This document shows, piece after piece, positions 1 through 27,010 of a DNA stretch of 64,000 nucleotides; position 1 is the stretch's first letter; every line of letters begins with the position of its first letter. The DNA is from Laetmonice hystrix (Eukaryota): positions 2,914,001 through 2,978,000 of the forward strand of contig OZ249445.1 of NCBI GenBank assembly GCA_965235115.1. The letters run 5' to 3'. The notes beneath the pieces were generated by a model that saw only the letters and a list, made by a program, of their open reading frames with translations, was not told where the DNA came from and ran no database searches. The position numbers and the translations under genes are program-made.

Positions 1-1105
1 TACATGAATACACAAAAAAAGAGTTTGTACAATAACGTACAACCTACGTTCCCATCTATACAAGGTGTGTTTCCTATTTTACAATTGTTCTTTTTTTGTT
101 CATACCAAGTCTAAAAACAACTTAAGTAGAAAGGCTGCAATGTGACGACCTGCCTTAACCCCTGGGGCAAGTCTCCCGTCCAATTCTTTTTTTTGTACAA
201 ATACTATAAAAATTGTAAAAATCTAATTGCTCTCACAAAGAGTATAGTAAGTATGTGATCATGAGTAGGACAGGGCTTTGGTGGCATCTTACTGTTGGGT
301 TTTGTACCTCTGTGAATGCACTCATTTTGATATAAACAAGGAAAGCATCTTTGTTCTGTTGTTCTCATTAAACCATAGTATCATCACCGATGACATTTTT
401 ACTTTGTCCAAACAGACACCGTGACAACGCATAATTGGTCTTTAAAACCTAAAACTTACAATCTTGATTGCACATAATTCCCTCCAATATATATTACTCT
501 CTATATATTATATACCCCATAAATTAATTTGCATAAATAATTATTAACACTTTTCTATAATCACATGGTGTTATAGTCTTGGAAAAACATAATCCCAAGA
601 ATCTCATCAAAAGAGATGAGCTTTCTTGGTGGATAAAATCAAAAACAAATATTCATTGTATAAAGAAAACATGATTGAAATAAATAATCACTCATGAACA
701 CAAAATATAACATTTTTCTCAATAATATGGAATGCGTAAACATTATGGAATGTTGCATACAACTAATGTAACATGGAGAAAAAAAGAGAAAAAGATACAG
801 GATGGCAAAACAAATAGAACTCGGTATTATCTGGTTTGTCTAGGTGGGACCAGATTGGAGCTGGTCCGCTGCAGCTCTATATTATATATATATTATATTG
901 TTATTTACAGACATTTGCATTCAAACCCGATGTGTCACATTCTTATAGATCATTGACACTACTCCAATGGGAATGGTAGGTGTTCGTGTATGGTATGGCC
1001 TACTAGTACAACAGTATGAGCCAGCGTCAAGAAGTAGTACGGACTACACTAAAAACACTGGTAGATTACAGCTCAACCTGATATGCCTGAGGATGGCCGT
1101 CATCC
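1..1105 (-). other. Probable 3' UTR (AT-rich) of the distal onecut homeobox exon; its poly(A) site is probably beyond the window edge
   Basis: Lies directly downstream of the TGA at 1108-1106 on the minus strand. AT-rich with no credible ORF. I found no minus-strand AATAAA here. Confidence 0.55.
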
Positions 1106-1398
1106 TCAGCTTTGAGAACAGGCGCTCTGGCCCGAATCTCCGTTGCTCAAAGTGTCGTCACATACTTCTCCTTGAAACCTGTGATATCGCCGCCGGGCGT
1201 TCATGAAGAAGTTGGCGACCGTCGAAACCTCCAGACCCAGTTGTTTTGCGATGGTCATCTGCATCTCCTTGGACGGCCGCTTTGTCTCCTTGAAAATCGC
1301 ATGAAGTGTACGGCGTTGGATGTCCGTAAAGACTAGTCGCGGTTTCTTGGGGGTCCGCTCTTTCGGTTGCTGCTGTTCCTGCTCTTTCTGTTTGCATG
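1106..1398 (-). CDS. onecut: ONECUT homeobox terminal exon B (distal); linker + homeodomain + C-terminus
   Basis: Acceptor ttctatactgtctttgcag|CA TGC (phase 1). Translation: (A)CKQKEQEQQQPKERTPKKPRLVFTDIQRRTLHAIFKETKRPSKEMQMTIAKQLGLEVSTVANFFMNARRRYHRFQGEVCDDTLSNGDSGQSACSQS*. F48 and M50 are ONECUT-diagnostic. The intron position (..LA A|CK) matches the known ONECUT exon boundary. Confidence 0.95.
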
Positions 1399-1575
1399 CT
1401 GCAAAGACAGTATAGAAGACAGACCTGTAAGTACACTCAAGTCAATCCGGGCTGATCACCAGGCTGGACTAGTGTCAACATAACACCACCATCACAGTTT
1501 TTTTTTGTCATGCACTCGGTGAGCGGCGAGCACCAACCCGACGAATGAAGCAATGGACGAATATGAACAAATAAA

Positions 1576-1604
1576 ATCATCATTATCATCATCATCATCA
1601 TCAT
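1576..1604. repeat. (ATC)n microsatellite
   Basis: atcatcattatcatcatcatcatcatcat, between the two homeobox exons. Confidence 0.9.
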
Positions 1605-1670
1605 GATCACCAATGATGTCCTTCGTTGCAGCTGCTGACAACAGAAAGTCCTGTTAGTCAAGGAGTCATG

Positions 1671-1676
1671 TTTATT
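1671..1676 (-). terminator. Candidate polyadenylation signal (AATAAA) for proximal exon A
   Basis: Plus-strand tttatt reads AATAAA on the minus strand, about 120 nt after the exon A stop. It is followed by ctgttgt (GU-rich) and lies upstream of the exon B acceptor. Confidence 0.55.
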
Positions 1677-1797
1677 TTGGTTGTTGATGCGCACGTGCAT
1701 ATGTCAATAATCCTGTCAAAAGTCACTCATGCATGCATGACACGAACAAGAGGCATGCACAGTTGTTGGAGAAGGAGCAAGGACACAGAGGATTTCA

Positions 1798-2102
1798 TCA
1801 GTTTTGCTGTTGGCTCATCATCGTCCCATCCGACATCAGAATCTGGGCCCCGTCTTGCCCCAGCGAATCCTCCATGTATTTATCAAGAGATCGCCTGCGA
1901 GCATTCATGAAAAAGTTGGCAACTGTTGACACTTTGAGTCCGAGCTGCTCGGCGATTGTCGCTTGCATCTCCTTGCTTGGACGTTTTGTTTCTTTGTATA
2001 TGGCCAGCAGGGTGCGCCTCTGAATGTCGGTGAAGACCAGGCGAGGCTTCTTGGGACCTGGGGCCTCCTGTCGTGGCAGATCGTGGTCTTTCCTCTTGCA
2101 AG
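1798..2102 (-). CDS. onecut: ONECUT homeobox terminal exon A (proximal); linker + homeodomain + C-terminus
   Basis: Acceptor atacatttctttttgcag|CT TGC (phase 1). Translation: (A)CKRKDHDLPRQEAPGPKKPRLVFTDIQRRTLLAIYKETKRPSKEMQATIAEQLGLKVSTVANFFMNARRRSLDKYMEDSLGQDGAQILMSDGTMMSQQQN*, with a second TGA immediately after. Canonical NARRRSLDK end. Confidence 0.96.
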
Positions 2103-3589
2103 CTGCAAAAAGAAATGTATATCTAACTCACAAGATCATTCGGTGGGGCGGGAACGGCTTGGGAGGTTCCCCCCTCGCTCACTTGGGGGCGCCCTATAAG
2201 AGATGAGATCCAGACGAGCACTCATTTCAAGCTGACAAACCTAAGGAATATTCGGATTGACCATCTGACCATTACTTGTACACAAATCTACTGTCGCAAT
2301 CAATCTTCGATGTACATATTTGTACTGGCGCTTTTATAAATTTTGTTACCGTGTCGTAAATGGCGGTTAAAATGTGTAGAATTTTGTAGTTGTTTCAAGA
2401 TTGCATCTACCATGTGCTTTAACTGTGGCTTGCTTGGTTTTTGCCGGTGTAGCATCGAAACGGCGGTAATAATGGTTTGATACAGGATTTCTTCACATAA
2501 CACATGGAGGGATTAGGTTCTTATGCGCTAGCCTTTAAGCTTTCCACTGCCTCTTGTTCAGCTTGTGATTACGAGTCTCCAGTGATTCCAGACAGCTGTT
2601 CAATTGTTGTGAAATAAGTGCCCGTATGAGACTGATGAAAAATGACTAATCTATTCGTGCAAAAAACACAGACACGAAACGAGGCCAAATACTCGTCCTC
2701 GGAAAAAACATCGGGACGAAGGAAATGTGTTGAGGATGAAAAATGAGAGAAATGGCATATTAAGAATACAAACAACACTTAGGGGAGGGGTATAAAAACT
2801 GTGTGATGACGTTATATTCCATCAGCGTGTGTGTGTGCACCTTTACAATGGCAAGGACAATAATTAACATCATGGAGTTAACATGTATCAACTGTCATCA
2901 AGAAAACACCGGTAGAAATAGAACAATGAAGGACAGGTCCTGAAAGTAGTGCATTGAGAGGAACACTGATAAACTGGAACAAACACCCTATTACCTACTT
3001 CAACATTACCTACTTCAACATCAATAGATCACTGCTTTCACTACCATCTGGTTTGGTGGTATACGGACTATGTGAACCATACTGAATTATGTCGGTGAAG
3101 ATATTCTCTCAAATGTCAGGATTTTGTAACATTTGTGTTAAAATGAAAACCTATCATTTTATCGCAGAAATGGTGTAGATTGGTAGGAACCTATCAGTCA
3201 GTCATGTATGATTGAAATGATAATTGTGATAAGTTAGAGAGACCCCTCTCATACTCGTAGAGCTCGACTAGCCCTGGCATTGATCAGTACACTGGGACCA
3301 GTTACTGGGTGCCGACGGTAGGATACACCTAGGTCCGATTATGTGTGAGCTATGACATAAACTAATAGGTAGCTGACCGTCAGGGTATCATCACTCTAAT
3401 GTTCTCCTCACCCCTCGCCCTCAGTCTCGTTAGGCTCCGTCCTCGGGAGGTTTACTCCCCAGGTTGGCCTCATCCTCAAGCCCCATCAATTTTTAATCGC
3501 TGAAGCTCGGCGGGCCACTTTGTTAAGGCGGTTGTGACGGGGCTAAGCTGGCCATTTAACACACTGCGGGGGCGGCCAGCCAGGATCAG

Positions 3590-3715
3590 GGCCCAGTTTT
3601 TCAAAACGTAAGATCTTGCTCCAGCTCTTAACGCTTGTGATTGGCTAGTCTACTGCAACCGGCCAATCAGAAGCGTTAAGCTTAACAAAGATCTTAAGCT
3701 TTGAAAAACTGGGCC
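3590..3715. mobile_element. 126-bp PIF/Harbinger-like MITE
   Basis: TIRs GGCCCAGTTTTTCAAA ... TTTGAAAAACTGGGCC, flanked by CAG (3587-3589) and CTG (3716-3718). The interior is also inverted (taagatctt/aagatctta; cttaacgcttgtgattggc/gccaatcagaagcgttaag). Confidence 0.75.
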
Positions 3716-3740
3716 CTGGTCTGCTGGTCACGACTACCAG

Positions 3741-3878
3741 TGACGGTTGGAGACCTCCCTGGCGTCCAGAAAACACAGAATCTAACAATGACCCCTCCCC
3801 CATCCCCACCAATGACGGCTGGAGACCTACCTAGCGTCCAGAAAACACAGAATCTAACAATGACCCCCGCCCCCATCC
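3741..3878. repeat. Two-copy ~72-bp tandem duplication
   Basis: tgacgg(t/c)tggagacct..gcgtccagaaaacacagaatctaacaatgacccc occurs at 3741 and 3813. Confidence 0.85.
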
Positions 3879-5324
3879 TTGGCGGGAAGCCCACCATACA
3901 ACCCCTTCACCAAGGACAACGTTCAGCTGGTGTCCAGTCAATGCTACAGCACTAACCGATGACCTTCAGGAAGCCCAAGTCCTGATGGCCTTCCGCACAC
4001 TCCTTCTGTCTGTAGGAAGGGCACCTGACAAGTCCTTGCCACCAGGCAGTCCTCCTTCCCATTTGGTGACCTCATAGGTCGGTCAGCAGGACATTGAGTT
4101 AGAGACAGAGGACATAGACCGGTGCCACCCCAGCCTGCCACTCCTTGTGTGAACGCGGCTAAAGTTTACCCCAAACCTCGATCTCTGGACCCCTGGTCAA
4201 ACTGCCAACACCCGCCCCATATGAGAACACTTGGCCCAACCGTCCCTGGGCATATTTCAGAAAAGTAATTACATGCTAAGCAGTGCAATTCCACTGCGGA
4301 GTTCACAAGGGGTGACCACTGCGCCCCTGCTGCTCTAAATCACCCCGCCCCAGCCACCCAAAGTTTCCAATCTCTGGACTGCCCTTCCATAACTCAGCTA
4401 GGCTTCGTGGGGGTGCACCGGACAAGGTGCCGCCCGCCTCCCGCTCGGGTGTGAGATCCTGCTCATCTTTAAATGAACAAGTATCAGCAACCAATCCCCA
4501 AACTCAACTCTCTCTCGCGCCCATTCAAATATTCTAATCATAATCACAACCCCAATATCATTAACGCCATTTTCTTGTAACCCTTAGCTGTTTTTGCTTC
4601 CTGCTGACAAGACTTGAGAGCGAACCTTAAATTGTCAAGCCAATTCACTACGACCAATTATCCTATCACATAAAAACACAATCCCATAAAAGATATCCCA
4701 TTAGACTGAACGCGTCGGCATTCTGTGTGAGAGCAGGTTTGATTTTTCATTGTCTCCCTTGGTTCTCATTGTCAGATCCATTAGACCCTGGCCTCTATGG
4801 GTTTCAAGACGTTTATATCTCCTCCAACACTGGGGGTTCAAACCCTATACATCACAACGACGGCTGCAAGGGGGCCTCTCCCTGGCCCCAAATCTAAGAT
4901 GGAGTGGTTCATCCTCCGAGGACCCATATTTGACTCCTGACTGGGCCCAAGGGTTGGTCCTGGCCAACAATAACTCACGACCTCCCGACTCTCTCGTGGC
5001 CAGCGTCCACTCCTTGAAATTAGCAACTTTTCATCTTGGAATAGCTGCAACTGACAACTTCATTTTCCCGTGCCTCTAAATGAAATAACTTCACGAAACG
5101 TCCATGAAATCTACGGTCTGAAGGATGCCAAACCCGCAAGGCCATCACGAATGAAATCTAAGAGCTGGAGACGGTTGTGCCGGTAAGAGAAGATCGAGGA
5201 TCAAACAAAAGATAACTAGATCATGAAGATGTCCCGGTCAGGAGGTAGGGAGACAGTGGCGGGTGGTGAGGTTGGGTTGGTCGGCCGGGATATGGCTGTA
5301 GTTAACGGGGATGTTGAGTTAGCA

Positions 5325-6621
5325 GGCCGGGATGAGACTGTAGCCGGTGGCCAGGCTGGGTTGGCCGGCAGGGATGAGACTGTAGTGTGGGGCCAGGCTG
5401 GGTTGGCCGGCAGGGATGAGACTGCAGTGGGTGGCCAGGCTGGGCTGGCCGGGATGAGACTGTGGGCGGCCAGGCTGGGCTGGCCGGGATGAGACTGCAG
5501 TGGGTGGCCAGGCTGGGTTGGCCGGGATGAGACTGTAGTGGATGGCCAGGCTGGGCTGGCCGGGATGAGACTGCAGTGGGTGGCCAGGCTGGGTTGACCG
5601 GCAGGGATGAGACTGTAGTGTGGGGCCAGGCTGGGTTGGCCGGCAGGGATGAGACTGTGGGTGGCCAGGCTGGGCTGGCCGGGATGAGACTGCACTGGGT
5701 GGCCAGGCTGGGCTGGCCGGGATGAGACTGCAGTGGGTGGCCAGGCTGGGTTGACCGGCAGGGATGAGACTGTAGTGTGGGGCCAGGCTGGGTTGGCCGG
5801 CAGGGATGAGACTGCAGTGGGTGGCCAGGCTGGGCTGGCCGGGATGAGACTGCAGTGGGTGGCCAGGCTGGGCTGGCCGGGATGAGACTGCAGTGGGTGG
5901 CCAGGCTGGGCTGGCCGGGATGAGACTGCAGTGGGTGGCCAGGCTGGGCTGGCCGGGATGAGACTGCAGTGGGTGGCCAGGCTGGGCTGGCGGGGATGAG
6001 ACTGCAGTGGGTGGCCAGGCTGGGCTGGCGGGGATGAGACTGCAGTGGGTGGCCAGGCTGGGCTGGCGGGGATGAGACTGCAGTGGGTGGCCAGGCTGGG
6101 CTGGCCGGGATGAGACTGCAGTGGGTGGCCAGGCTGGGCTGGCCGGCAGGGATGAGACTGTAGTGTGGGGCCAGGCTGGGCTGCCCGGGATGAGACTGCA
6201 GTGGGTGGCCAGGCTGGGCTGGCCGGGATGAGACTGTGGGTGGCCAGGCTGGGCTGGCCGGGATGAGACTGCAGTGGGTGGCCAGGCTGGGCTGGCCGGC
6301 AGGGATGAGACTGTAGTGTGGGGCCAGGCTGGGCTGGCGGGGATGAGACTGCAGTGGGTGGCCAGGCTGGGCTGGCCGGGATGAGACTGCAGTGGGTGGC
6401 CAGGCTGGGCTGGCCGGCAGGGATGAGACTGTAGTGTGGGGCCAGGCTGGGCTGGCCGGGATGAGACTGCAGTGGGTGGCCAGGCTGGGCTGGCCGGGAT
6501 GAGACTGCAGTGGGTGGCCAGGCTGGGCTGGCCGGGATGAGACTGCAGTGGGTGGCCAGGCTGGGCTGGCCGGGATGAGACTGCAGTGGGTGGCCAGGCT
6601 GGGCTGGCCGGGATGAGACTG
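5325..6621. repeat. GC-rich minisatellite, 38-bp main unit (35- and 42-bp variants), ~33 copies
   Basis: Unit gggatgagactgcagtgggtggccaggctgggctggcc. It explains the 475- and 491-aa repetitive ORFs. Confidence 0.97.
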
Positions 6622-8197
6622 TCCTCTCGGCTGTCACAGACACTGACTTGAGACGCGCCGTTTATTGACCGGCCGCACACCTGAGATGGAGGTAGCATGG
6701 TGTTCGGCTCGGCTCCATGGCGGCCGACCTCCCAGGCCCAGCCAGCCATGTAAGTGGTAATCAATGAGTAGCGTTTAGTAGCATAGTTAGACACGACATC
6801 TCATGACTGCACAAACCTCCACCGCCCGCTCTGTAAGAAACACCTCAGCTCTAGGCCTTTGTCTTCAGGGCGAGCGATCAATGACAGTCAAAGTGATCTG
6901 GTTTCGCTGGGTTTCGTGGTATTTCTGTAGGAAATCCGTGCACCATGGGCCGCCTTGACGGCTGACAGGGCTGCACGGGGAGGGAGGGGGCAGCGTTGTT
7001 CGACCTGGTGTTGGCGGTAATCAGTCATGTCAAGCTGTAGCTCACCCAGCACAAAATCAATGCTCTCTCAATTGTTTCATTGGAGGAACAATTACTGCCC
7101 GCATGTTGCCGTTAAACAGACGAGTTGTGCTTGCCACCTTTGGGTGACATGAAAGAGTTTGCACTTAACACGAGGGCGGGCACCTGCTAGTGACACAACA
7201 ACTAACTGGCCGATAGTCTCACACTCAACTATCACATTCCATGAGGTTTCATCTGATCAACAACCTGTTTCCTGACTACAACCTTATGTTTAGGACCATG
7301 GAGAAATCTAACACACATCATAATACCATTTACTGGTCTCCCAACCACCTCCACCGCCGTGTCTGTGTTCCTTCTGCCTAAGACAATATAATTATATACT
7401 AAATCAAATGCAGAAAAATCCCGCCTTATTATCCGTAATTTAGCAGCCATCTTGTCTTTCCTTTGATATGAGGCACAACAATCACAATGGTATAATTACT
7501 ACCCTTCTTTCCCCGCCTCCGCTTTCATTTGAACACTGTAAAAACTCATCCCCTTTGCAAAATTGCAACACAGAAAAAAAAAATCATCTTTGATTCAGAA
7601 TTCTCATTACAGTACGCATTGTAATTATAATATTGCTTCAATAATAGGACACAGAATTGGGCCATGAAAAAATGACAAGATACACTAAAACGATGCGTTT
7701 TCTTTCCACTGCAAGACTAATTTCCAACACATTATCTGTCTGAGCCACGGGGCAGCTAGATTCCATCAGTTGGTTTAAGTTACACTAAGCACGTCTTGCA
7801 GTTTATTGCCAGGTGGCTTGGTGTTTTTTAAACATACAGGTCCTTTTCTCCACAAGACCACAACGATCAAGAGTATTCATTGCCATAATAAAAAAAACAC
7901 TCCTACTTTGTAATTTGCGCATTGTATCTTTCGCTGTCACTAAACTCTATTTCTATATATTTGAATTTTAAAAATTATAATACAGGCTTCAGTTTAATCA
8001 GAATCTACATCTATAAATTATAGCTGTTTTTCTGTTTTCCTGCTTAAATTTTCCAAATGCGTATTGAGACGCCCAGGTAGCAGCTGCTGTCTTCCTGCAG
8101 GTACTTCCAACCCTAGCCACTGATAGTATTGACTACACACGTCGTCAGACCAGCAGCATACCCATGGTATAGGGGGGCAGGTTGGGGAGGGTCTACT

Positions 8198-8413
8198 AAT
8201 GACGCTGTTGGCATCCCAAAGGATATCTGCCACTTGGCCTGGGCCCCTTGTGATGAGATTGTTATCAACCCAAGGAATATCTGCCGCTAGGCTTGGGCCC
8301 CTTGTGATGAAGGTGTCATCACCCTGTGGGATATCTGCCAATACGTCTGGGCCCCTTGTGATGAAGGTGTCATCACCCTGTGGGATATCTGCCAATACGT
8401 CTGGGCCCCTTGT
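8198..8413. repeat. 54-bp degenerate tandem repeat, 4 copies
   Basis: gggccccttgt anchors at 8241, 8295, 8349 and 8403. On the minus strand it reads TRGPxxxADIP.. in an 18-aa period. Confidence 0.9.
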
Positions 8414-10057
8414 AAGGAGTTTTGTCAACACCCCATGGGATAATCTCCCACTGTGTATTGGGATTAAGAGGTCAATAGACACATGCCAGTTATCCATTGC
8501 CCTCTGGCATAAAGCTGTCTTGCCCCTTGAGGTACCTGCCATTATATCAACATATAAAAGGTTACCTTATTAGATGGTGGTGACTATGAGCATGCAATCA
8601 GAAACTAATGAGACACAATGAGTCATGTAGATCCTCTATCAAACCATGATTTCACTGTGCCCCGGCCTGAACTGGATGTACTGGAGTGTTGAGGTGCTAT
8701 ATCATAAACAGAACCATCCAACACTGGACTGGGGGAGGGGCGTGGTTTCTAAAACACTTACTGTACTTACAGTATGAGACCAGGTATCTACAGTACAATA
8801 AATGCCGTGTACATACATGTACTACATTAAAGCTATCACACACACACAGCCTGTTGAGAGGTTGTTGCTGAGAGAGGCCCTCCTCTAAGCGGTATCCCCC
8901 GGCATCAGCGACAACTTTCCTCACTCAAACACACCCTACCTTTTAATGCGACATAAAACCTCCATCTCCCCCTTTATACGTATAACCGTCCACTCGAATA
9001 ATTTCCTTTTTCCTCTCTTTGTTCGGTCCTGAGACGTGATATTTTCCCGACAAAAGAATCATATCATCGTTTGGAGTCGGCCCTGCCTCCACCTACTCCA
9101 TGTCTCAAGGAGAACAATGCCAGATTTTTATTGCCGAGCCTTTTTCCCGGTTACAAAGAAGTGCGATGCTAAAACAGTACATTTAAGACACCCTATGCGT
9201 CGGTCTACACACGGAAACCAGATCTCTTTGTGGTGCAGATCGTCTTCACAAATCTAAAGTGCATCTTTTTATCTTGTTGAAATGAAACCGAAACCTCCGA
9301 GTTCACTTTACAGACTAGCCTCGACTCGGGTTTCGTTGCGCCCTGCTACCTTTGCCGAGCGGGAGGATTTGCCTAGGTGAGATTACGGTTGTACACCTGT
9401 TAGTCCCTTCGCAGCACTTAAGCGATGCACATCAATCGCCTATCAATTATTCAGCTGGTGGGGGCTGCCATAGGAGCCTGGCTCGGAATTAAATGGCCAT
9501 GATTTCCTACCATGGTGCTGCCTACTCCCCTTGCAGGCTGCACTAAACCCTGCCGACCTCACCGGTCGCCGCACACCTTCCCCGATATGGACCCCTCCCC
9601 CTGCTGCAACCAATCGACTTTCTATACTCAACCCATTCACACCTTGAAGACACTATGTCAGAGTTTGCTTGCCGTGAGCTACGCTCTACACATCGAGTTG
9701 AACTCGACGATCGTCGAGAGTCCGTGACAGTGGAATTACCATGGCATTGTGAAGCACCACTTGCCACTCCGTGTCCAACACGAGAAATCTCCATATGAAA
9801 TGACATATAGTTCCGCGTCCACGCACACCAGCTTTCATTAGCCATTTCAGGATAATAAAACCCTTTGTGCTGTGGCAGCTATTTGACGGCATTAATGAAT
9901 GCTCTATCATGGTGGCGGCCGCTGGCCCCTGGCCTGCTAGACCACCAATTACTTCACTGAATCACAACCTGCACCAAGTATCAGCATACACCATGGCCCT
10001 AACCTCTCTCCATGGATCTACTTTAATTTCCTATTTGTAAACGTCATTTCATTTCCT

Positions 10058-10386
10058 ACATCTGTACGGCACGCATTACGATTCCTATCCGCCTGGTTCG
10101 GGACATCTGTACGGCACGCATTACGATTCCTGTCCGCCTGGTTCGGGGTAAGGGGCGATTAAGAAGGAGTAGATCGGTAAGTTTTGACCTAACCATAGTG
10201 GAGCGAAAAGTATACCAAGTTCTTACCTAACCATAGTGGAGAGAAAACCATACCCAGTTTTTACCTAACCATAGTGGAGCGAAAACTATACCAGGTTTTC
10301 ACCTAACCATACAGTGGAGCGAAAAGTATACCCAGTTTTTACCTAACCATAGTGAAGCGAAATCTATACCAAGTTTTCACCTAACC
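10058..10386. mobile_element. Possible non-autonomous Helentron/HINE-like relic: 45-bp duplication plus 38-bp CCTAACC-core array
   Basis: A 45-bp direct repeat (10058, 10103) is followed by acctaaccatagtggagcgaaaa.. units at 10187, 10225, 10263, 10301, 10341 and 10379. The repeats are certain; the element class is inferred. Confidence 0.35.
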
Positions 10387-10910
10387 AGCTTTGAACCAAT
10401 GATCGTTGCATCATAGTTTCATTCTGTGGCACTTTTTGTGGCATTTTAAGATCATTGCTTGAATAGTTGTCGGGCGTTATGATTGGTTGTTGGGTTACTA
10501 TTTTCGCCCCAAGCGGGTTGTTTAGCCAATGGTGGAGGAGGGTACAGATGGTGGAGTTGTTAGATGGAGGAGTTGACGGTCGTCAGTCAGTGCCATCGCC
10601 TGGTAACCACGAACGCTGCCCTCCCACCGTCTGTTTATCCTCCTCCCCGTGTCTACATGCCCCGTTTGTGTTCCACCTCATCACCATGGCGACTGTAAAC
10701 ACCCTCCTGCCACACCTGGGCTTGAGAGCGAGGCTGGGGGTGGGTGGGGTGGGGGCGGCTTCCATGGACCATCAGTCTCTCCTCGCCAAGCCTCTGTCAA
10801 TTTGCATTCCTATTAACATTTCTATACAAGCCTGAGCACACAAGTCGCAGCGACACGGCCGAGGTACGGCCTTTTGTGGGCCGCTCGCTGACCAGGTACG
10901 GCTGTGGGCA

Positions 10911-11035
10911 GGCCGGATCGGCTGGCTGGATCGGCTGGTTTGGTCGGCTGGTTTGGTCGGCTGGTTTGGTCGGCTGGCCGGATCGGCTGGTTTGGTCGGC
11001 TGGCTGGATCGGCTGGTTTGGTCGGCTGGTTTGGT
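10911..11035. repeat. 13-bp minisatellite (cggctggtttggt / cggctggctggat), ~9-10 copies
   Basis: Directly visible two-variant array. Confidence 0.95.
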
Positions 11036-11833
11036 CATCCAGCCACAGCGAACAATCTCTTTTGTTATATAAAATCAAACGTGACCAAGCCGGAGGAGAA
11101 CTCCGGTCGTCTTTAATTGCTGGCCATGTTCTAGGGGTTGGTGTTGACACAAGGGACGGTACAGGACATCATTAATGTTTTAGTGCACACCTGCTCATCA
11201 ACGAGTTATAACTACAAGGATCCCATAAGGACTTTCAAATTGGGTTTGGTTATGATCATGGGCTTTTCAGGTCCTCAACCCTTCATCCCAACAACCGTGA
11301 CCCTCGTCAGAATAGAGTCAGTCAAGTACAACACCAGTACGAAACCATGTACAAAGACTGAGAAAGGTCGGCGACGAAATTGGTCGCCTATGACGTAATA
11401 ATACGGGATCACGTATTACGTAATACATTCCGTATACCTGCACACCTATGTATGCCCCTGATGTATAGATTGTAACGGTCATTGTTACACGGATTGTAAG
11501 ATGGGTTTGATCTGCTGACTGATGGCGTGAGAGCCGTCGACTCTCCAACAGGCCGACTGCCCACCCGGCTGAGTGACTGAGGAGGGTTTGCATGTCTGGG
11601 TTAGATCATGGCTCTTCACTGCCCACCTCCCAAACTCCACTCAGTATCGCCAGAGAATCCTTAACGTGTAAGCAAGCTGTGGTCCGCTAGGCCATCAGAG
11701 GGTAATCTTGGTCGATTCAGCTTGCATGGGGCGAATTCCCGTAATGCACCTAATGCGAAGCGAGAGTCTGCCAATGACAATACATGAACGGCCGTGCTCT
11801 GCCGTGGCCATTGCGACAGACGATCGGAAAATC

Positions 11834-11856
11834 CACGTGTGATTGGGCTATAAAAG
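11834..11856 (+). promoter_or_regulatory. E-box + inverted CCAAT + TATA cluster
   Basis: CACGTG 11834-11839, GATTGG 11841-11846, TATAAAAG 11849-11856. Motif match only. Confidence 0.25.
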
Positions 11857-13431
11857 TGAGCGATCGGGTCGGGCGTAGGGACTACACGACTGATGGGGTG
11901 AGCTTGGGGGGTATGCGGCCCAGCCTAATGAGTGACAGCCAAAGGTGTCGCTAGTGTCGCCGCTAACGACCACTAATGTCACCTTGGCCGGCCATTTTGG
12001 CGGTCAGTGACTGGTGACAACGTCTGCTGTCAAGGGAGTTGTTCTGGGTGGAGGCGACCCGCTGCCCACCACACACCTGAAATAGCCAAGTTCCTACGCC
12101 TCCCTGACACCCGACGTATAATTGCAAAAGCCAGTTGCTGTGACATTTGATGAAGACGAATAGGCTGGTTGCCCCGGCAACAGGCGGGAGCCAGGGCGGG
12201 CCAGCCAATTGACCTGTTGAGTACTGCTTGTACATAGGAAAGTTAGATGCAGAATCAAAACTGACATCGCGGCTTGATGGACGGGCCATCACATTAATGC
12301 AGTGGCTACAGCGGCCGTGTTTGCTATGCGGCAGCCGTAGCGGTGAGACACGGCACTACAGCCACATACACCGGCTGTGAGCCCCGGCCCCGGCCCAAGG
12401 CCCCGGCCCCGGCCCAAGGCCCACGTCAGCCCATGGTCATCGTCCTTGGGCCGGACACACTGCACCACTATGATCTCGAGACACGACTGCCTGCTTGCCC
12501 ACTCATCTACCTCCTCCTCCTGTACGACACTGATCAGGACTTTACAAAGCACAGACCCCTTCACTTCAGTTTGAGTTCTTCAAAACTAAAACGTGTCACC
12601 GTAAAGTCCGATAAAAGTCCAGAAAATGTGAGAAATTGGCAATACTAATTTGACAAGAAAGGTTACCCAAAAGCTGAGTGAAAGCAGCTAATGTACTGAC
12701 TTTACCTGAATGCAATGTGTTCGTTCTTAGAATAAATTCCGCTTAGTAACTCGTGATGAGTCCAAATAAAAAAATCTGTTTACACCCGGCTCTAATGAAT
12801 TCGTAGGCCTATGTTATTTTGGTTGTGTGCAGTATGAGATTATCCGGCAGGAACAGTAAGAGATACACACCGTCAGTGGCGGTGAATACGGGAGACAGGT
12901 TGAATCGTTCACCGCCGGCAGGCTCGGCAGGGAGAGTGTCAGGGAGACCGTCAGACGGCGGTGTCTCCCTCCACCAGCCCGCCCTACGTGCCGCCGTTAT
13001 ACGCGCAGAGGACAGGCGAGTTGTGAGAGGGCCCCCGGGGAATACTCCCCAATTTTCAACATCTCAGCTCGCTGTAGTTCCCAGCAAGCCCTGCAGATGG
13101 CACGCTTACCTCCGGGACAAGTGTAATGAAAGAAATTGTATGTTGGCGTGGATTTGTCGCCGGTATTTACGGCCGGGCTGAGCCTAGCAGCCACACGTGA
13201 GATTGAAGCACCCAATGAAGGTCAAAATGTTGGAAGGGTTTGAAAGTTTGTAATTATCGTGAGTGTACCCCCATGGGGTGGGAGGGAGACCCCACCAGGC
13301 TGCGTCCCTAGGTGTGCCGTGGTTGGGCTTGTCCTTGGTGAGTTTGGAGCGGGCCAGTGGAAGGGCAGAACACTGGGATAGAAACGGGGTTGGCAGTGCT
13401 TGGGTTGGGTTTTGAAGTCGAGCTGAATGCA

Positions 13432-13567
13432 GCGTTGGATGGCGGTATGATGGCGGTATGATGGCGTTGGATGGCGGTATGATGGCGTTGGAAGGCGGTA
13501 TGATGGCGTTGGATGGCGGTATGATGGCGTTGGATGGAGGTATGATGGCGTTGGATGGCGGAATGAT
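13432..13567. repeat. 21-bp dimeric minisatellite (gatggcggtat + gatggcgttg)
   Basis: Alternating 11- and 10-bp subunits, about 6 dimers. Confidence 0.93.
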
Positions 13568-16500
13568 GAAGAAGTAGACCTCAGGATGGCATGTGACAGT
13601 GGGGTGGGGGTGAGCGGGTTAGGGGTCCAGCAAGTAACCCCTCACCCACTGCCCGCCCCACACCCCAGACACTCAACATCCAACTGATCACTCTTCTGAA
13701 GAATTCTCTTTTCTCTGGTTTTTGTTTTTGTAAAAAGGCTGTCCAAATGAAGGTCGGATGGCGTGCCAAGCCGGCCGGTGGTCGGGCGGGTGGGGAGGGC
13801 ACGTCCGACTGGAGATGGTCACACAAACCTAAGTGGATGATAGTAGTAAGACAAGTCGGGCGGCCATCTCATCTAAGAGATGTGAGAGGGGACAAGTCAG
13901 GGCACCCAGCCGCTGCTCGCCACCGCCCACAGAAACAAATGGTGGAGAGCAATGGAAGATGATGTCTGGTGATAGAAAGTCAGGAATCATGGAGTCAGAG
14001 AACGCCTCAGTTAACTGTGCAAGCATTGCTTCCTCTCGCTCACCAGCAAGGGTCACCTGATGGATGAGTCCAGCCTTGGGTCCTGGCAGCCCCACCTAAA
14101 TTGCATTGCCTGTCATGTGAAAAATCAAATCTACGCCGTTTACGCTGAAAACAAAATTTTCAGTAGGAGGCAATTTCTAAATTGCCGAGTTTTGCCCCCG
14201 CCATGTCCAAGCGAAATGCCAAATTTATCAGGTTTACGTGCGAACGGTAACCTTGTTTACATTAATTGCAGTGACAGTGCAGTAAATTCCATGTCTGTGC
14301 CTGGCTAGCGGCACTTTGCATGGGATTTGTTGGTGCTAAATGGCATTACCCAGATTTCGTTTCAGGGGTTAAACACCAAATTGACATTATGAAATTGAAA
14401 CACAAACTTTCAACGGCTCAAGTAATGAAATTTTTCTCTAGACAAATTGAAATAGGTTGTGGCAGCGCACACCCTAATCGCAGACTCCCAGTGATGCCTT
14501 CAAATTGAGCATGTAACACCTAAAGTGTATTTGGTCCATGCCCGCTGGGCCTGCCCTACCCTCTCCTGCCTCCTGAAGCATCTGTATTGACAAAGTTATT
14601 AAACCCCGATCTCTATCAATATTGAGAATTGACGAGGGCAGAGTAGAATTCGCAGCGATCCCAAAATAATGGGTTTTATAAGGCCACTTGGCAGGGAGTA
14701 GAAGGAATTAGTGTTGAATCTTGTGCAGGATGTCCGGGGAGTGGACAGGCGGCAGCCAACGTGAGGCGACACGTCTGGCGGGGGATGTGACATCAGTACA
14801 TGTAAATTGGAGCCACGGCCGCGGGTCTACCTCCTCCTTGCACCTCTAATTCTAATTATATTGGCAGCTGCTGTGCCACGGAGGCGATCCCAATCACATT
14901 TGGGTCTCACACCTCAAGCATTGCGCAGACACAAGCCCAAGTTGACACTTTGCCAAGCGTGAGGTTGAATGGCCAGCATCTTCTGCTTACCCCCTGATAC
15001 ATATAAATGTGGCATCTCTCGTCACGTGCCTACTTTACAACCAGCTGGTCGGGAACACGAGGAAGGTGACCCTAGTCTCCAGGAGGCCTGCTCAACTCGG
15101 CTTCAACCAGCAACAAACTTCTCCCTTAAATATTACAACCACACTCCTCCAAACTTCATGCTCCGAGGCGCCTCGGTTTGAGCTTTTTTTTTCCGAGACC
15201 AAACACTCGTAATTTGAGGAGAGTGGTGGCCTGAGTCATTGCAGCTTGAGGCTAGGGTAGAAATGATTACGATATGACCGGTGGCTCTGATCCGTTCATC
15301 AACTCCTGCTTGGTACCGCCAGCATCTGCGGGCCCGGCCATCTGCGTGGGCTCGTGGCGGGTCCCACGGGTACCGGGCGCCGGCTGTGAGGGCGGGCGGG
15401 CGGCCGGGCGAGCTGTCTCCGCCAGTCCTTAAAGACCCGTGATCAGCGCCTGTGTTTGCCGGCTCGCCCTGCTCGCCCAGCACCGACTGCTCATTGCTGG
15501 AACCACACAATTTGACTTGCTAATAGTGGTGTTTAGTGGAAATGAAGGAAGCCGAGGTGGAAGGTTGGCGGGGACGGTGGGAGGACTGTCCGGGCGGCGT
15601 ACCCCCGCCGTCCGCCGGTCGCACCGTCCCCCGTCCCCCTCCCCGTACACAGATTGCCCGTGACACAGAAAATTTAAACTGATCACATTAGTCTAATTGT
15701 TGCCTGACAAATCATTTAATCTTTAGAGTCCCATGTGGGAACTGATGATATTGGAAACGTGGACCGGGTGCTAAGGAGGCTACCCCGTGCCATCACCACT
15801 GACCTTCAGCGTGGAGAGGTCTACATACCCGCACCCAATCTAACAGTGATCGAATACTGAACTAACGGCCATCTACAGTCACAGAGCAAAGGACACGATT
15901 TATTAATGAAAAACTTCTTCATATCTCTCATTCAAACATCTCAGACTAATAAAAAACAAACAAACAAAAATTAAAAAAAATACATTGATCTATTTGACAA
16001 CACTTCTAAATTAAGACACTAATGATAGACAAACTGTTCTCAATTTTAGTTCTAAAATAGAGACAATTTCCCTTATTTCTATTTTTAATGCCTTTTTTTC
16101 TTGACTCTAAACTTGAAAGCGCTACCATCGGAAATTCCCGCCATGCAGTTCTGCCGCTTGTCCCCACTTTTATGATCTCCAATAATGTGCCAATAGTAAC
16201 GGAGTTATCTCCATAGCAACTAGACAGCGTCCCGGTCGATTGTCCCTAGCAGAACAGCCGTCAATGTATGGTAATGGCTGGTTAATTCTGTCTTGTGTAG
16301 AAATTAGGCCAGGCTATGGATTACCAATAGATGTGGCTGCTGCTGCTGAAGTGGGACCCGCTCTAGTCTTCTTGCAGACAGTTCAGTATGTCACCACTGT
16401 GCGGCAGACTCGTGTTGAGCGGCGGACATCGATATGTTGCACCTAGACAACCTCCCACATGATCAATCAAGGTGGCTCCTCTATTTACGCGTATACATAG

Positions 16501-18081
16501 ATTGCAACAGATGTTAGTGTCGTCCTTAACAGATGTTAGCGTCATCTGTGGGCCCATTAATAGCAGCGCCGTATAGACGTGGAAGGTGTTGTGTATTGGG
16601 GTGCAGGGTTGGGGTGGGGAGGGTGGGAAGCAGGGTTGGAAGGGGCTAAATTAGATTGATCACCAATATGTGTGATGCCGGTAGGAGGTTGGTCGAGGAC
16701 GTCGCAATCCATAAATCGTTTGACGGAGGTGAGGAGGGAGGACTGCCGGTTGCCGGGCCCCGGCAGGCCGGCCGCTGCCTGCCGGGAGGCGGCCGCCGCT
16801 ACCTGCGTGCACGCCCGCCGACAATGGCCAACCTCAGTCCGCCGAGTCCATGGTGACCACCTAGTACAGACCGAGTGGGAGCGGCACCAGATGCACTGCG
16901 CCTCGTCTTCCTCCGCAAACACCACGCAACAATAGTCCTCGCTCTCCTCTTTTATCCCGCGAAAATACCGAAAACCGGATCTGTAGCCAGCCATATTGTT
17001 CAGGTTTTGTTACCATGGTCACCGCTCAGAGTAATCCTCAAAATATGAAATTAATACGTCGGATATGAAAGGGGAGATGGAAACGAGCATGTTTTTATCG
17101 CCAAAGGTGTTAGCTCCTACATTTGTTGCTGATTGTGGCGGTGTCTGGTTGGAAATCCTGGCCCGGACTTATAAAGCCAATCTCTTCTTCCCCGCGCCGG
17201 CTAAATCTTACTGACACAGGACACTGGCCAAACGGATGATATTTGCTTTGAATCAGCAAAGGGAGCTAGAAGCCACACATCTTTGACATAAAACCCGTTG
17301 ATACCAATGGCACTTGTAATTGCTATCTAATGACGTTATGCTACAAAAGCATCACAGACCTGAGCTCAACCGCCACCTTGTCCGAGACGTCATATTTACT
17401 TTCTCTGCCAATACTTTTTAAAGTGATCCTGTGCCATTTGCAATTTTTTAGATTGGGTCCTCACAGGATGGGCCTGACCCGAGAACAGAGTTCTTAAACA
17501 GAGCCTGCATTTTAGAAATTGCCACAAATCAATTCCTTTTTTCATAATTCCTCCATCCCTTCATGCCTCACAACTAAATCCTTTCGTGGGTCTCTTCCCC
17601 GCCAATCTCTTGCCATGTTATGAAATTAAAATCACTGTAAATGGATGACCCTCCGGCTCGAGCGTCCATTGCCAGTGGAGCCATCCCTCCTGAGACCCAG
17701 GCCGTCTTCGTCTCATCCTCCGCTCCGGGCGGCCGAGACAATACCCTCAGAGAACCCGCTCCCGTTCAGCGTTGCTCAACTAAGATGTTACGGTGGCTAA
17801 ATCACCTGCAATCGGTGATTCTGACCCCCCGCTGAGGTTTCAAAGCATACAGCTTCGCATGACTCGCCAATAGCGTCACCCCCCCCCCCCCCCCACCACC
17901 ACCACCACTCCACCCCCAGCTCGGCTTAAATCTAGTCACGCCTTACACCACGTTGAAAAAAAAACCTGCCGCAGACTTGACGTTGTCCCCGCGGATGGGA
18001 CTTCAAATACCGGCCACCCGCTGGTCACACACCCTGCTTGGTGGCGGCGAACAATCGCCCAATCTTTTCTGGCACGCTCCT

Positions 18082-18824
18082 TGTTCTCCACAGTAAAACA
18101 AGCGTCAGGAGTCATGGGATGGTGTTCTCCACAGCACAACAAGCGTCAGGAGTCATGGGATGGTGTTCTCCACAGCACAACAAGCGTCAGGAGTCATGGG
18201 ATGGTGTTCTCCACAGTAAACCAAGCGTCAGGAGTCGTGGGATGGTGTTCTCCACAGTACAAGCGTCAGGAGTCGTGGGATGGTGTTCTCCACAACACAA
18301 CAAGCGTCAGGAGTCGTGGGATGGTGTGTTCTCCACAACACACCAAGCGTCAGGAGTCGTGGGATGGTGTGTTCTCCACAACACACCAAGCGTCAGGAGT
18401 CGTGGGATGGAGTGTTCTCCACAACACACCAAGCGTCAGGAGTCATGGGATGGTGTTCTCCACAACACAACAAGCGTCAGGAGTCGTGGGATGGTGTGTT
18501 CTCCACAACACACCAAGCGTCAGGAGTCGTGGGATGGTGTTCTCCACAGTACAAGCGTCAGGAGTCGTGGGATGGTGTGTTCTCCACAACACACCAAGCG
18601 TCAGAGGTCGTGGGATAGTGTTCTCCACAGCACACCAAGCGTCAGGAGTCGTAGGATGGTGTTCTCCACAACACACCAAGCGTCAGGAGTCGTAGGATGG
18701 TGTGTTCTCCACAGCACAACAAGCGTCAGGAGTCGGGATGGTGTTCTCCACAACACACCAAGCGTCAGGAGTCGTGGGATGGTGTTCTCCACAACACAAC
18801 AAGCGTCAGAAGTCGTGGGATGGT
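18082..18824. repeat. ~41-bp minisatellite (38-43-bp variants), ~18 copies
   Basis: Unit ggatggtgttctccacaacacaacaagcgtcaggagtcgtg. It explains the ORFs at 18038-18883. Confidence 0.97.
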
Positions 18825-19355
18825 ACTCTTCACTCTGCAACCACTGCCGTAATCTAACAAATCTTCTCCCAGGCAATAACTAATACACCACCTCCATTTA
18901 TACCACCGTCCTGCGGGTACACAACACATCGCCCAAAGTCCTACTCTTTTCACACGTTTCATTCTCTCTGATTGTGTTTGATAAATTGCCTGATATTTTC
19001 TTTCTTTAAAAAAACGAATACTCCCCGCACTCTTAACGGGGTCCTTTCATCTCGTGTGCCACAAACCAGAGACCCGACTGATTAGGGTTCTCACCTTTAG
19101 GCGACCATGGCAGTTCTTTCTTCACGTTTACCCTCGATTCATTCATTGATACCCTTTTACCTTAATTGCAGTTCAGGGTTTTTTTCTCCTCAAAGATTAC
19201 CAAGGTATATTCCCCGTCCTTGCCTCACTCGATCGCAAGACCCCTCATGTTCCACCATATTCCTTGGACCGACCTTCTTACCTCGGAGGTCCACCTGACG
19301 GTCCAGCTTATATATCCCACACCACACTCCTCCCACCGACCTGACTACTGCACAT

Positions 19356-19442
19356 GGGCCCATTCTGGGTCCAGGGCACAGGGGCCCATTCTGGGTCCAG
19401 AGCACAGGGGCCCATTCTGGGTCCAGGGTACAGGGGCCCATT
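19356..19442. repeat. 26-bp tandem repeat, ~3 copies, with degenerate flanking copies
   Basis: gggcccattctgggtccag(g/a)gcacag repeated. Older ggtccacc(a/c)tattcc motifs flank it. Confidence 0.9.
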
Positions 19443-21198: not shown

Positions 21199-21347
21199 GG
21201 CTTATGTCTCTCGCGGCTGGGGGTTCAGCCTTCAAACTGTTCTAGACTTTCTCAGATTCTCAGTTCGGTCCAGGCCTATGTCTCTCTCAGCTGGGGGGTC
21301 AGCCTTCAAACTGGTGTAGACTTTCTCAGATTCTAAGTTCGGTCCAG
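21199..21347. repeat. Two-copy ~74-bp duplication
   Basis: tatgtctctc..ctggggg..cagccttcaaactg..tagactttctcagattct.agttcggtccag occurs twice. Confidence 0.88.
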
Positions 21348-26950: not shown

Positions 26951-27010
26951 CCCGGGCCTGCAGCCCCGGCCTGCAGCCCCGGCCTGCAGCCCCGGCCTGC
27001 AGCCCCGGCC
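26951..27010. repeat. 13-bp GC-rich repeat (ctgcagccccggc), ~4 copies
   Basis: Directly visible. Confidence 0.9.

What the first reader, a model, noticed from the sequence alone, without database searches (positions are those of the whole stretch)
1106..2102. Onecut gene with two tandem, interchangeable homeobox terminal exons
Seen: two complete ONECUT homeobox exons lie 400 nt apart. Each has a polypyrimidine-ttgcag acceptor in phase 1, a 15-aa linker, a 60-aa homeodomain and its own stop. There is no CUT exon between them, so exon B can only be used by splicing past exon A. Known: ONECUT genes typically have one homeobox exon joined to the CUT exon at this same position, and CUT and homeodomain act together in DNA binding. 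Inference: exon duplication lets one CUT domain be paired with either of two homeodomain/C-terminal modules, a paralogue-like diversification inside one locus. I am not aware of this being described, but I cannot search. The ORF track misses both exons.
Basis: partly seen in the sequence, partly recalled or inferred. Interest (0 to 1): 0.85.

Follow-up and report, generated by a model that had tools for sequence, protein, structure and literature searches.

The report
Annelid Onecut gene, two alternative homeodomains
This worm's single Onecut transcription-factor gene ends in two tandem, intact homeobox exons that at least eight related species have kept side by side, so one CUT domain can probably be joined to either of two homeodomains, an arrangement I could not find described for this gene family.

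Summary
On the minus strand, exon A (2102-1798) and exon B (1398-1106) each have a polypyrimidine-YAG acceptor in phase 1, a CUT-HD linker, a complete ONECUT homeodomain and a stop.

They are the only two ONECUT homeoboxes in the 627-Mb genome. The only ONECUT CUT exon lies 116.3 kb upstream on the same strand. Its phase-1 donor (GCA G|GTAACT) fits both acceptors.

The pair is ancient, not an artefact:
- Seven other species keep the same A-then-B tandem, including the annelid Paralvinella palmiformis.
- Each exon type has fixed signatures. At homeodomain positions 36/41, A has E/K, B has K-or-R/E, and the usual state is Q/E.
- Synonymous sites are saturated, while dN is 0-0.06 for A and 0.03-0.16 for B.

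Four spliced cDNAs from other species join CUT to an A-type homeodomain. I found no CUT-to-B transcript, and this organism has no RNA data, so use of B is inferred from constraint.

The leech Helobdella and two other lineages show only A within 8-10 kb.

The most likely mechanism is a choice between two acceptors in one composite 3' end. I found no published description. This is a new variant of a known kind. The scan has not reported it before on other DNA.

The parts
1798..2102 (-). Exon A. It is the upstream alternative homeobox exon: 2 nt of a split Ala codon, then a 100-codon linker, homeodomain and tail, then the stop at 1800-1798.
   Evidence: Sequence. Pfam Homeodomain E 2.9e-11. Member of the A-type clade with support 98/92. 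dN is 0.016-0.062 to orthologues while dS is saturated.
2103..2122 (-). Acceptor of exon A: polypyrimidine tract (catttctttttgc) and the AG at 2104-2103.
   Evidence: A YAG acceptor at the identical codon position occurs in all 8 species.
1876..2055 (-). Homeodomain A, 60 aa. Its signature states are L17, E36, K41 and Y60.
   Evidence: K41 and Y60 are present in 33 of 33 distinct A-type homeodomains, and E/D36 in 32 of 33.
1399..1797 (-). A-B gap of 399 nt. It holds an AATAAA at 1676-1671 and an (ATG)n microsatellite at about 1618-1569. It is either the 3'UTR of A-ending transcripts or intron for B-ending transcripts.
   Evidence: The gap cannot be aligned even with the closest relative.
1106..1398 (-). 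Exon B. It is the downstream alternative homeobox exon: 2 nt of a split Ala codon, then a 96-codon linker, homeodomain and tail, then the stop at 1108-1106.
   Evidence: Sequence. Pfam Homeodomain E 1.7e-12. Groups with the B exons of L014 and L012 at 93/86. 92-94% amino-acid identity to the B exon of the closest relative. dN is 0.03-0.16 while dS is saturated.
1399..1418 (-). Acceptor of exon B: polypyrimidine tract (cttctatactgtctttgc) and the AG at 1400-1399.
   Evidence: Conserved in all 8 species.
1172..1351 (-). Homeodomain B, 60 aa. Its signature states are H17, K36, E41, and YHRFQ at positions 56-60 in place of SLDKW.
   Evidence: K/R36 occurs in 8 of 9 distinct B-type homeodomains and E41 in 9 of 9. 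Positions 56-60 are rewritten.
190..239 (-). A 50-nt highly conserved non-coding block, 867-875 nt downstream of the exon B stop. It may be a shared 3'UTR element or an enhancer of the locus.
   Evidence: It is single copy in the genome. It is about 95% identical, on the same strand and in the same relative position, in L019, L012/L013 and L014.
2103..64000 (-). The part of the 116.3-kb intron between the CUT exon and exon A that lies inside the window. The CUT exon itself is at window-equivalent 118403-119474, outside the window.
   Evidence: No credible protein domain in the long window ORFs. No linker micro-exon detectable by similarity.

Best explanation
The window holds the 3' end of the genome's single Onecut (HNF6-type) gene. 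One large 5' exon encodes the N-terminal region and the CUT domain. It ends in a phase-1 donor 116.3 kb upstream.

That donor, or an optional linker micro-exon as seen in relatives, can be spliced to either of two acceptors 704 nt apart.
- The proximal acceptor gives CUT + homeodomain A. Translation stops inside A. The transcript then ends in the gap or runs on through B as 3'UTR.
- The distal acceptor skips A and gives CUT + homeodomain B.

A and B arose by an ancient tandem duplication of the terminal homeobox exon in the annelid lineage, and both have been kept since. Their DNA-recognition helix is identical (TVANFFMNARRR). They differ at fixed surface positions: 17, a charge-swapped pair at 36/41, and the end of helix 3 at 56-60. 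They also differ in their C-terminal tails.

The two isoforms should therefore bind the same core site. They should differ in partner or cofactor contacts, or in CUT-homeodomain cooperation.

Shown:
- the exon anatomy;
- a single CUT exon and a compatible donor;
- conservation of the tandem, of both acceptors and of both coding sequences;
- the CUT-to-A join in cDNAs of four other species.

Inferred:
- the CUT-to-B join;
- the shared 3' end;
- the functional difference between the isoforms.
For: 1. The genome has one ONECUT CUT exon and two ONECUT homeoboxes, all on C11 on the minus strand.
2. The donor GCA G|GTAACT is in phase 1. Joined to either exon it completes an Ala codon (GCT or GCA) and restores the canonical ...ALRLA-A-CK[RQ]K... 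junction seen in all spiralian Onecut proteins.
3. The A-then-B tandem, on the same strand, is found in 7 further species: L010 Paralvinella palmiformis, L011, L012/L013, L014, L019, L020/L021 and L022.
4. All 16 acceptors are polypyrimidine-YAG at the same codon position. The first exon base is C in 14 of 16 while the second base varies, as expected for a split GCN codon completed by a G.
5. dS is saturated, while dN is 0-0.06 for A and 0.03-0.16 for B.
6. The A-type clade has support 98/92. The window's B groups with L014 and L012 B at 93/86. Signature states are fixed per type.
7. Spliced cDNA contigs join CUT, a linker and an A-type homeodomain in four species (P0019/L009, P0122, P0137, P0170).
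8. In L012 the gap is only 102 nt with no poly(A) signal. L011 and L022 also lack one. This argues for acceptor choice with a common 3' end.
9. A conserved block lies 0.9-1.4 kb downstream of B in four species, whereas the A-B gap is not conserved.
Against: - No transcript joining CUT to a B-type exon was found. All four full-length cDNAs recovered are A-type.
- No RNA run exists for this organism, so neither junction is observed in this genome.
- In Helobdella and two other lineages only A is present within 8-10 kb. B is therefore dispensable in some annelids.
- A canonical AATAAA lies in the window's gap 121 nt after the stop of A. None lies within 2.4 kb after B. The 3' end of B-type mRNAs is therefore undefined.
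- The intron is very long (116 kb), and optional linker exons could not be located.
Confidence: 0.7

Rival explanations
1. Exon B is used, but not with the CUT exon. It is spliced to a separate 5' exon transcribed from its own promoter inside the big intron. The product is a CUT-less, homeodomain-only Onecut-derived protein.
For: No CUT-to-B cDNA was found. The Paralvinella annotation models B as its own gene with a small upstream exon in the A-B gap.
Against: - B keeps the canonical CUT-HD linker (ACKQKE...PKERTPKKPR) and the same phase-1 split Ala codon that fits the CUT donor.
- The A-B gap is as short as 102 nt in L012 and is not conserved. A promoter plus first exon there is unlikely.
- The Paralvinella models are unvalidated predictions that also cut exon A off as a separate gene.
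Confidence: 0.14
2. Only exon A is a functional coding exon. B lies in the 3'UTR of A-type mRNAs, or is never spliced, and is conserved for a non-coding reason or is a slowly decaying relic.
For: All recovered cDNAs are A-type. B is absent near A in the leech and two other lineages. B evolves faster than A.
Against: - B keeps an open frame, a complete homeodomain, its acceptor and its stop in 8 species.
- Substitutions are concentrated at third positions: third-position identity is 0.30-0.56 against 76-94% amino-acid identity. This is a protein-coding pattern of constraint, not an RNA or DNA one.
- A relic would have accumulated stops over a divergence at which synonymous sites are saturated.
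Confidence: 0.08
3. The pair is an assembly or haplotype duplication artefact, or a recent lineage-specific duplicate with no special meaning.
For: None beyond the bare fact of two similar exons lying close together.
Against: - A and B are 71% identical in nucleotides, and third positions are 31% identical.
- Read-derived contigs cover both at equal depth.
- The same pair, with type-specific signatures, occurs in 7 other species.
Confidence: 0.01
4. A and B are joined in series, giving a CUT-HD-HD protein with two homeodomains.
For: Multi-homeobox genes exist in the CUT class (dve/Compass), as noted in PMC6118893.
Against: - Exon A has a conserved in-frame stop in all species.
- Its tail holds no GT that could act as a phase-1 donor before the stop.
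- The cDNAs end translation in A.
Confidence: 0.02

Closest known systems
Vertebrate ONECUT1/HNF6 gene structure and its alpha/beta isoforms
   Same: - The architecture is the same: a large first exon encodes the N-terminus and the CUT domain, a very long intron follows, and a terminal exon encodes the linker end, the homeodomain and the C-terminus.
- The exon junction is at the same place...LRLAA|CKRKEQE (alignment to 2d5v; spiralian proteins).
- Alternative splicing between CUT and the homeodomain is known from optional linker exons. These are also seen here in molluscs, Lineus and the annelid cDNAs.
   Different: The known isoforms change only the linker length, and the homeodomain is always the same exon. 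Here the whole homeodomain and C-terminal module exists in two alternative versions.
Mutually exclusive tandem exon duplication in the Meis homeobox gene of the annelid Capitella teleta (Irimia et al. 2011, PMC3140891)
   Same: It is a tandemly duplicated exon of a homeobox gene in an annelid that gives alternative protein versions.
   Different: The Meis case is an internal exon (exon 9), and its two versions differ by 5 residues. Here the duplicated unit is the terminal exon. It carries the entire homeodomain, its own stop codon and different C-terminal tails. The choice is between two acceptors, not a mutually exclusive internal pair.
C. elegans ONECUT cluster ceh-41 / ceh-21 / ceh-39
   Same: It is a lineage-specific multiplication of ONECUT homeodomains lying next to one another on one strand and transcribed together.
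   Different: In the worm these are separate genes in an operon. Here there is one CUT exon and two bare homeobox exons, which have no start codon or promoter of their own and can only be used by splicing.
CUX/CASP shared locus (alternative splicing joins one 5' region to two different 3' modules)
   Same: It is a CUT-class locus in which one 5' part is spliced to alternative 3' parts (review PMC10515288).
   Different: CASP is an unrelated Golgi protein module without DNA-binding domains. Here the alternatives are paralogous homeodomains. [quoted passage not shown]

Membership tests
ONECUT class homeobox gene (CUT superclass) | A single CUT domain upstream of the homeodomain | tested here: met
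   Pfam CUT PF02376 scores 121.4 bits at C11:3032413-3032640(-), inside a 359-aa ATG-started exon. The other CUT hits are a three-repeat CUX gene on C18 and a partial hit on C12. The link to the window's exons is by strand, order, phase and uniqueness, not by a transcript from this species.
ONECUT class homeobox gene (CUT superclass) | A divergent homeodomain with F48 and M50 (FFMNARRR in helix 3) | tested here: met
   Both exons read TVANFFMNARRR. The best PDB matches are HNF6 2d5v and ONECUT2 8t0f. The family-defining residues are cited from my knowledge of Lannoy et al. 1998, which the review cites.
ONECUT class homeobox gene (CUT superclass) | A conserved CUT-HD junction and linker (LRLAA-CKRKEQE...KKPRLVFTD) | tested here: met
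   The donor G plus CT or CA gives Ala, followed by CKRKDHD (A) or CKQKEQE (B). This matches all spiralian proteins.
Alternative splicing of tandemly duplicated exons (alternative acceptors or alternative last exons) | Two homologous exons in tandem with equivalent splice-site phase | tested here: met
   Both are in phase 1, with a YAG acceptor at the same codon, in 8 species.
Alternative splicing of tandemly duplicated exons (alternative acceptors or alternative last exons) | Both exons maintained by purifying selection | tested here: met
   dN far below saturated dS in all orthologous pairs; fixed type-specific residues.
Alternative splicing of tandemly duplicated exons (alternative acceptors or alternative last exons) | Transcripts that join the common upstream exon to each alternative | tested here: inconclusive
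   CUT-to-A is seen in four cDNA contigs of other species. CUT-to-B was not found. P0091 is a possible case but cannot be placed. No RNA data exist for this organism.
Independent tandem Onecut paralogue genes | Each copy has its own CUT exon, start codon and promoter | tested here: not met
   There is only one ONECUT CUT exon in 627 Mb. Neither homeobox exon has an upstream in-frame ATG before the homeodomain. The gap is 102-1410 nt and not conserved.

The most novel reading that the evidence does not exclude
Annelids have kept, since before the split of terebellid polychaetes and clitellates, a single-locus switch that gives one Onecut CUT domain either of two homeodomains. The two differ by a reciprocal charge swap at positions 36/41 (E/K against K/E, ancestral Q/E) and by a rewritten end of helix 3. 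This would be a splicing-based equivalent of the vertebrate ONECUT1/2/3 paralogy, changing cofactor or cooperative binding rather than the core DNA site. Clitellates would later have lost B and become A-only.
Probability: 0.5. Interest if true: 0.72.

Novelty: new variant of a known kind. Interest (0 to 1): 0.62.

Why it matters
Onecut/HNF6 factors are conserved regulators of neuronal and endodermal differentiation. They are usually treated as one fixed CUT + homeodomain unit per gene.

If both exons are used, annelids diversify the DNA-binding and cofactor module of this factor by splicing instead of by gene duplication, and have done so across deep divergences. That gives a natural experiment on what the non-recognition surfaces of the ONECUT homeodomain do (positions 17, 36, 41 and 56-60).

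It also corrects annotation. Current annelid gene sets split this locus into CUT-only and homeodomain-only models:
- Paralvinella LSH36_337g04021 and its neighbouring model;
- Helobdella HELRODRAFT_65724;
- Owenia and Dimorphilus CUT-only products.

Homeobox surveys could therefore miscount Onecut genes.

Tried and rejected
- **RNA evidence in this species.** The look-up of sequencing runs found only three DNA assemblies of one sample. Read laying on them shows equal DNA depth and no joints.
- **Searches for a CUT-to-B transcript.** I tried the full-length search, a homeodomain-region search with P0019, a short-product search and the exhaustive representative search with exon B. These gave more genomic B exons (P0324-P0327) but no CUT+B product.
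- **P0091.** This cDNA has CUT plus a B-like homeodomain. Neither the homeodomain tree (long branch) nor the exon-1 tree (polytomy) could place it, so it is not used as evidence.
- **Isoforms in molluscs, Lineus, Lingula and Octopus.** I checked them as possible precedents. They differ only in linker exons and have one canonical homeodomain.
- **P0115 and P0129** (canonical type) turned out to be bivalve-like.
- **Linker micro-exons in the 116-kb intron.** tblastn with 72 linkers gave only chance-level hits with stops.
- **Long ORFs in the window.** They give only sub-threshold or low-complexity Pfam hits. Those at 5216-6794 are a minisatellite.
- **Rfam on 1-2500.** Nothing credible.
- **Organisms behind the unnamed assemblies.** Accession searches in the literature and cluster look-ups gave no names.
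- **A fuzzy-regex scan** for the conserved block timed out. I replaced it with blastn-short.

Full report
**1. What is in the sequence**

On the minus strand the window holds two homeobox segments.

- Exon A begins at 2102, after the tract atacatttctttttgcag. It reads CT|TGC AAG..., encoding (A)CKRKDHDLPRQEAPGP, then the homeodomain KKPRLVFTDIQRRTLLAIYKETKRPSKEMQATIAEQLGLKVSTVANFFMNARRRSLDKY, then a 25-aa tail ending QQQN. The stop is at 1800-1798.
- Exon B begins at 1398, after ctatactgtctttgcag. It reads CA|TGC AAA..., encoding (A)CKQKEQEQQQPKERTP, then KKPRLVFTDIQRRTLHAIFKETKRPSKEMQMTIAKQLGLEVSTVANFFMNARRRYHRFQ, then a tail ending SACSQS. The stop is at 1108-1106.

Both hit Pfam Homeodomain. 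Their best solved relative is the HNF6 CUT-homeodomain chain 2d5v, aligned from exactly the CKRK junction. The stop of A and the acceptor of B are 399 nt apart.

**2. The rest of the gene**

The window is C11:2914001-2978000 of a 627-Mb, 35-contig assembly. A six-frame search of the whole genome gave these results:

- There is one ONECUT-type CUT exon, at C11:3032413-3032640 on the minus strand (121 bits).
- There are three CUT repeats of a CUX gene on C18 and a partial hit on C12.
- There are only two ONECUT-type homeoboxes, the two in this window.

The CUT hit lies in a 359-aa ORF that starts at an ATG (MTMENMGEL...) and ends ...EFQRMSALRLAG. The DNA there reads CGG CTA GCA G|GTAACT, a phase-1 donor. 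G+CT and G+CA both give alanine. Either join therefore restores the canonical ...ALRLA-A-CK[RQ]K... junction seen in all spiralian Onecut proteins retrieved.

The intron to exon A is 116.3 kb. The part of it inside the window holds no convincing gene. I found no recognisable linker micro-exon in the whole intron.

**3. Not an artefact and not recent**

Contigs built from the reads of the source sample cover both exons at the same depth. They break only at an (ATG)n microsatellite in the gap.

Over the homeodomain codons A and B are 71% identical in nucleotides, 91% in amino acids and 31% at third positions. Synonymous sites are therefore randomised.

**4. Other spiralians**

Annotated Onecut isoforms of molluscs, Lineus, Tubulanus, Lingula and Octopus differ only by optional linker exons between CUT and the homeodomain. 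All share one canonical homeodomain...TLHAIFKE...TIAQQLGLE...RRRSLDKW...C.KS-stop. The tandem pair is therefore not the general spiralian state.

**5. The A type is a conserved, expressed class**

A short-product search with exon A found dozens of A-type exons (TL[LMVY]AIFKE...TIAEQLGLKVSTVANFFMNARRRS.DKY). Among them are the annelids Paralvinella palmiformis (LSH36_337g04021) and Helobdella robusta (HELRODRAFT_65724). Many of these products read through a polypyrimidine-AG acceptor, so they are genomic exons.

Four Logan contigs are spliced cDNAs that join a CUT domain, a short linker and an A-type homeodomain:

| Protein | Contig length |
|---|---|
| P0019 | 1,819 nt (run SRR19644540) |
| P0122 | 1,240 nt |
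| P0137 | 2,125 nt |
| P0170 | 2,176 nt |

In a tree of homeodomain modules the A type is one clade with support 98/92. It contains the window's exon A, all relatives' A exons, Helobdella and the four cDNAs.

**6. The tandem is conserved**

Genomic contigs of seven further species carry an A exon followed by a B exon on the same strand:

- L010, Paralvinella palmiformis, where the two exons are annotated as two separate small genes;
- L011;
- L012/L013;
- L014;
- L019, the closest relative, whose B exon is 92-94% identical in amino acids to the window's;
- L020/L021;
- L022.

The gap between the stop of A and the acceptor of B is 102-1410 nt. All sixteen acceptors are polypyrimidine-YAG at the same codon position.

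The first exon base is C in 14 of 16 exons, while the next base varies. That is the pattern of a split GCN codon completed by the G of a phase-1 donor.

The window's B groups with L014 and L012 B (93/86). It shares CKQKE, TIAKQLGLE, RRR[YLF]H[KR][FY] and a ...QS stop with them and with P0324-P0327. The B exons of Paralvinella and L011 are more derived (KKHRLVFS.AQRRTLRAIFKETPRPTKE...RRRCRDKW) and sit on a long branch.

In Helobdella (L016) and two unnamed lineages (L017, L018) only A is present within 8-10 kb.

**7. Selection**

For all orthologous pairs dS is above 1.7 or cannot be calculated. dN is 0-0.06 among A exons and 0.03-0.16 among B exons. Both are protein-coding sequences under strong purifying selection, and B evolves faster.

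Type-specific states are nearly fixed:

| Homeodomain position | Usual state | A type | B type |
|---|---|---|---|
| 17 | H/Q | L/V/M | mostly H (R or Q in some) |
| 36 | Q (100/117) | E/D (32/33) | K/R (8/9) |
| 41 | E/D | K (33/33) | E (9/9) |
| 60 | W | Y (33/33) | Q/A (W in two) |
| 56-59 | S-x-D-K | S-x-D-K | [YFLC]-[HR]-[KRD]-[FKY] |

The recognition helix up to R55 is identical in A and B.

From general homeodomain structure, positions 17, 36 and 41 lie on the helix 1/2 face away from the DNA. That is background knowledge, not a test made here. I therefore infer that the isoforms differ in protein contacts or CUT-homeodomain cooperation rather than in the core site. The reciprocal charge swap at 36/41 is striking but not interpreted further.

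**8. Mechanism**

The evidence fits a choice between two acceptors for one phase-1 donor.

- Use of the proximal acceptor gives CUT+A.
- In the window there is an AATAAA 121 nt after the stop of A. L011, L012 and L022 have no canonical signal in the gap, and in L012 the gap is only 102 nt.
- At least in those species, A-type mRNAs probably run through B and share a distal 3' end.
- Use of the distal acceptor removes A with the intron and gives CUT+B.

Between the window and L019 only the two exons, with about 10 nt of each acceptor, and one 50-nt block downstream of B can be aligned. That block (window 239-190, core AGCAATTAGATTTTTAC(A)ATTTTTATAG) is single copy in this genome. It recurs 1.07-1.42 kb after the B stop in L019, L012/L013 and L014 at about 95% identity. 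This shows constraint on the DNA or RNA downstream of B. Its function is undecided.

**9. What is missing**

No CUT-to-B transcript was found. There is no RNA run for this organism. P0091, a cDNA with CUT and a homeodomain sharing B-like states (K17, K36, E41, R57), could be such a transcript. Its species cannot be placed, so I do not count it.

The main rival is a CUT-less transcript that uses B from its own promoter. It is disfavoured by the retained CUT-HD linker, the split Ala codon, and the short, unconserved gap. It is not excluded.

**10. Taxon and age**

The named species with these exon types are annelids. An earlier follow-up of this scan on another window of the same genome also calls it an annelid.

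The A type occurs in a terebellid (Paralvinella) and a leech. The A/B split therefore predates their common ancestor. This is an inference. The unnamed assemblies could not be identified.

**11. Literature**

Searches of the held library found no description of alternative ONECUT homeobox exons.

- The 2023 CUT-gene review lists one Onecut per invertebrate except C. elegans. It calls the CUX/CASP splicing fusion unique among homeobox genes.
- The C. elegans ceh-41/21/39 cluster is an operon of separate genes.
- A spiralian homeobox survey lists a single Onecut in Spirobranchus.
- The nearest analogue is a mutually exclusive duplicated exon 9 in Capitella Meis, whose two versions differ by 5 residues.

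The library lacks most subscription journals, so absence there is not proof of novelty.

**12. Verdict**

It is refined in two ways: the duplication is ancient and shared among annelids, and the event is best seen as acceptor choice in a composite 3' end. The CUT-to-B junction remains unproven.

The finding is a new variant of a known kind of mechanism: alternative use of tandemly duplicated exons encoding a DNA-binding domain. It is of real but moderate interest.

Noticed in passing
window 190-239 (minus strand): A 50-nt non-coding block (core AGCAATTAGATTTTTAC(A)ATTTTTATAG) is about 95% identical in four species, 0.9-1.4 kb downstream of exon B. It is single copy in this genome, and its flanks cannot be aligned. 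It has no Rfam match. It could be a 3'UTR element (it contains a CPE-like UUUUUAU) or an enhancer with homeodomain-type sites.
   Followed up: partly
window 5325-6621: A minisatellite of about 33 copies of a 38-bp unit (118-bp higher-order period). It produces spurious 475-491-aa ORFs in two frames of the minus strand, plus shorter ORFs on the plus strand.
   Followed up: partly
window 1569-1618: An (ATG)n microsatellite lies in the A-B gap. All read-derived contigs of the source sample break there.
   Followed up: yes
L010 (Paralvinella palmiformis JAODUP010000337.1) 9980-11436; L016 (Helobdella robusta KB096742.1) 10001-10177: Public annelid annotations cut the Onecut locus into homeodomain-only gene models (LSH36_337g04021 plus a neighbouring model; HELRODRAFT_65724, 59 aa) and CUT-only models elsewhere (Owenia and Dimorphilus products). 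Homeobox gene counts based on these models could therefore be wrong.
   Followed up: partly
L016, L017, L018: The leech Helobdella and two unnamed lineages have only the A-type exon within 8-10 kb. The leech-like and oligochaete-like cDNAs (P0122, P0137, P0170) use A. This suggests exon B was lost in clitellates.
   Followed up: partly
P0091 (Logan cDNA, 599 aa): This full-length product has a CUT domain and a divergent homeodomain sharing the B-like states K17, K36, E41 and R57. It may be a CUT-to-B transcript from an unidentified spiralian. Its placement in the trees is unresolved.
   Followed up: partly
G000:C18:13697636-13702767 (+) and G000:C12:10586127-10586249 (-): On C18 there are three CUT repeats followed by a homeobox, which is the CUX gene of this genome. 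On C12 there is a partial CUT-like hit (39.8 bits), possibly a Compass or SATB-like gene.
   Followed up: no
window 276-282 (minus strand): The heptamer ACCAAAG lies downstream of exon B. From memory it matches the seed of miR-9, a known regulator of vertebrate Onecut genes. It is not conserved in the closest relative, so it is probably a chance match.
   Followed up: partly
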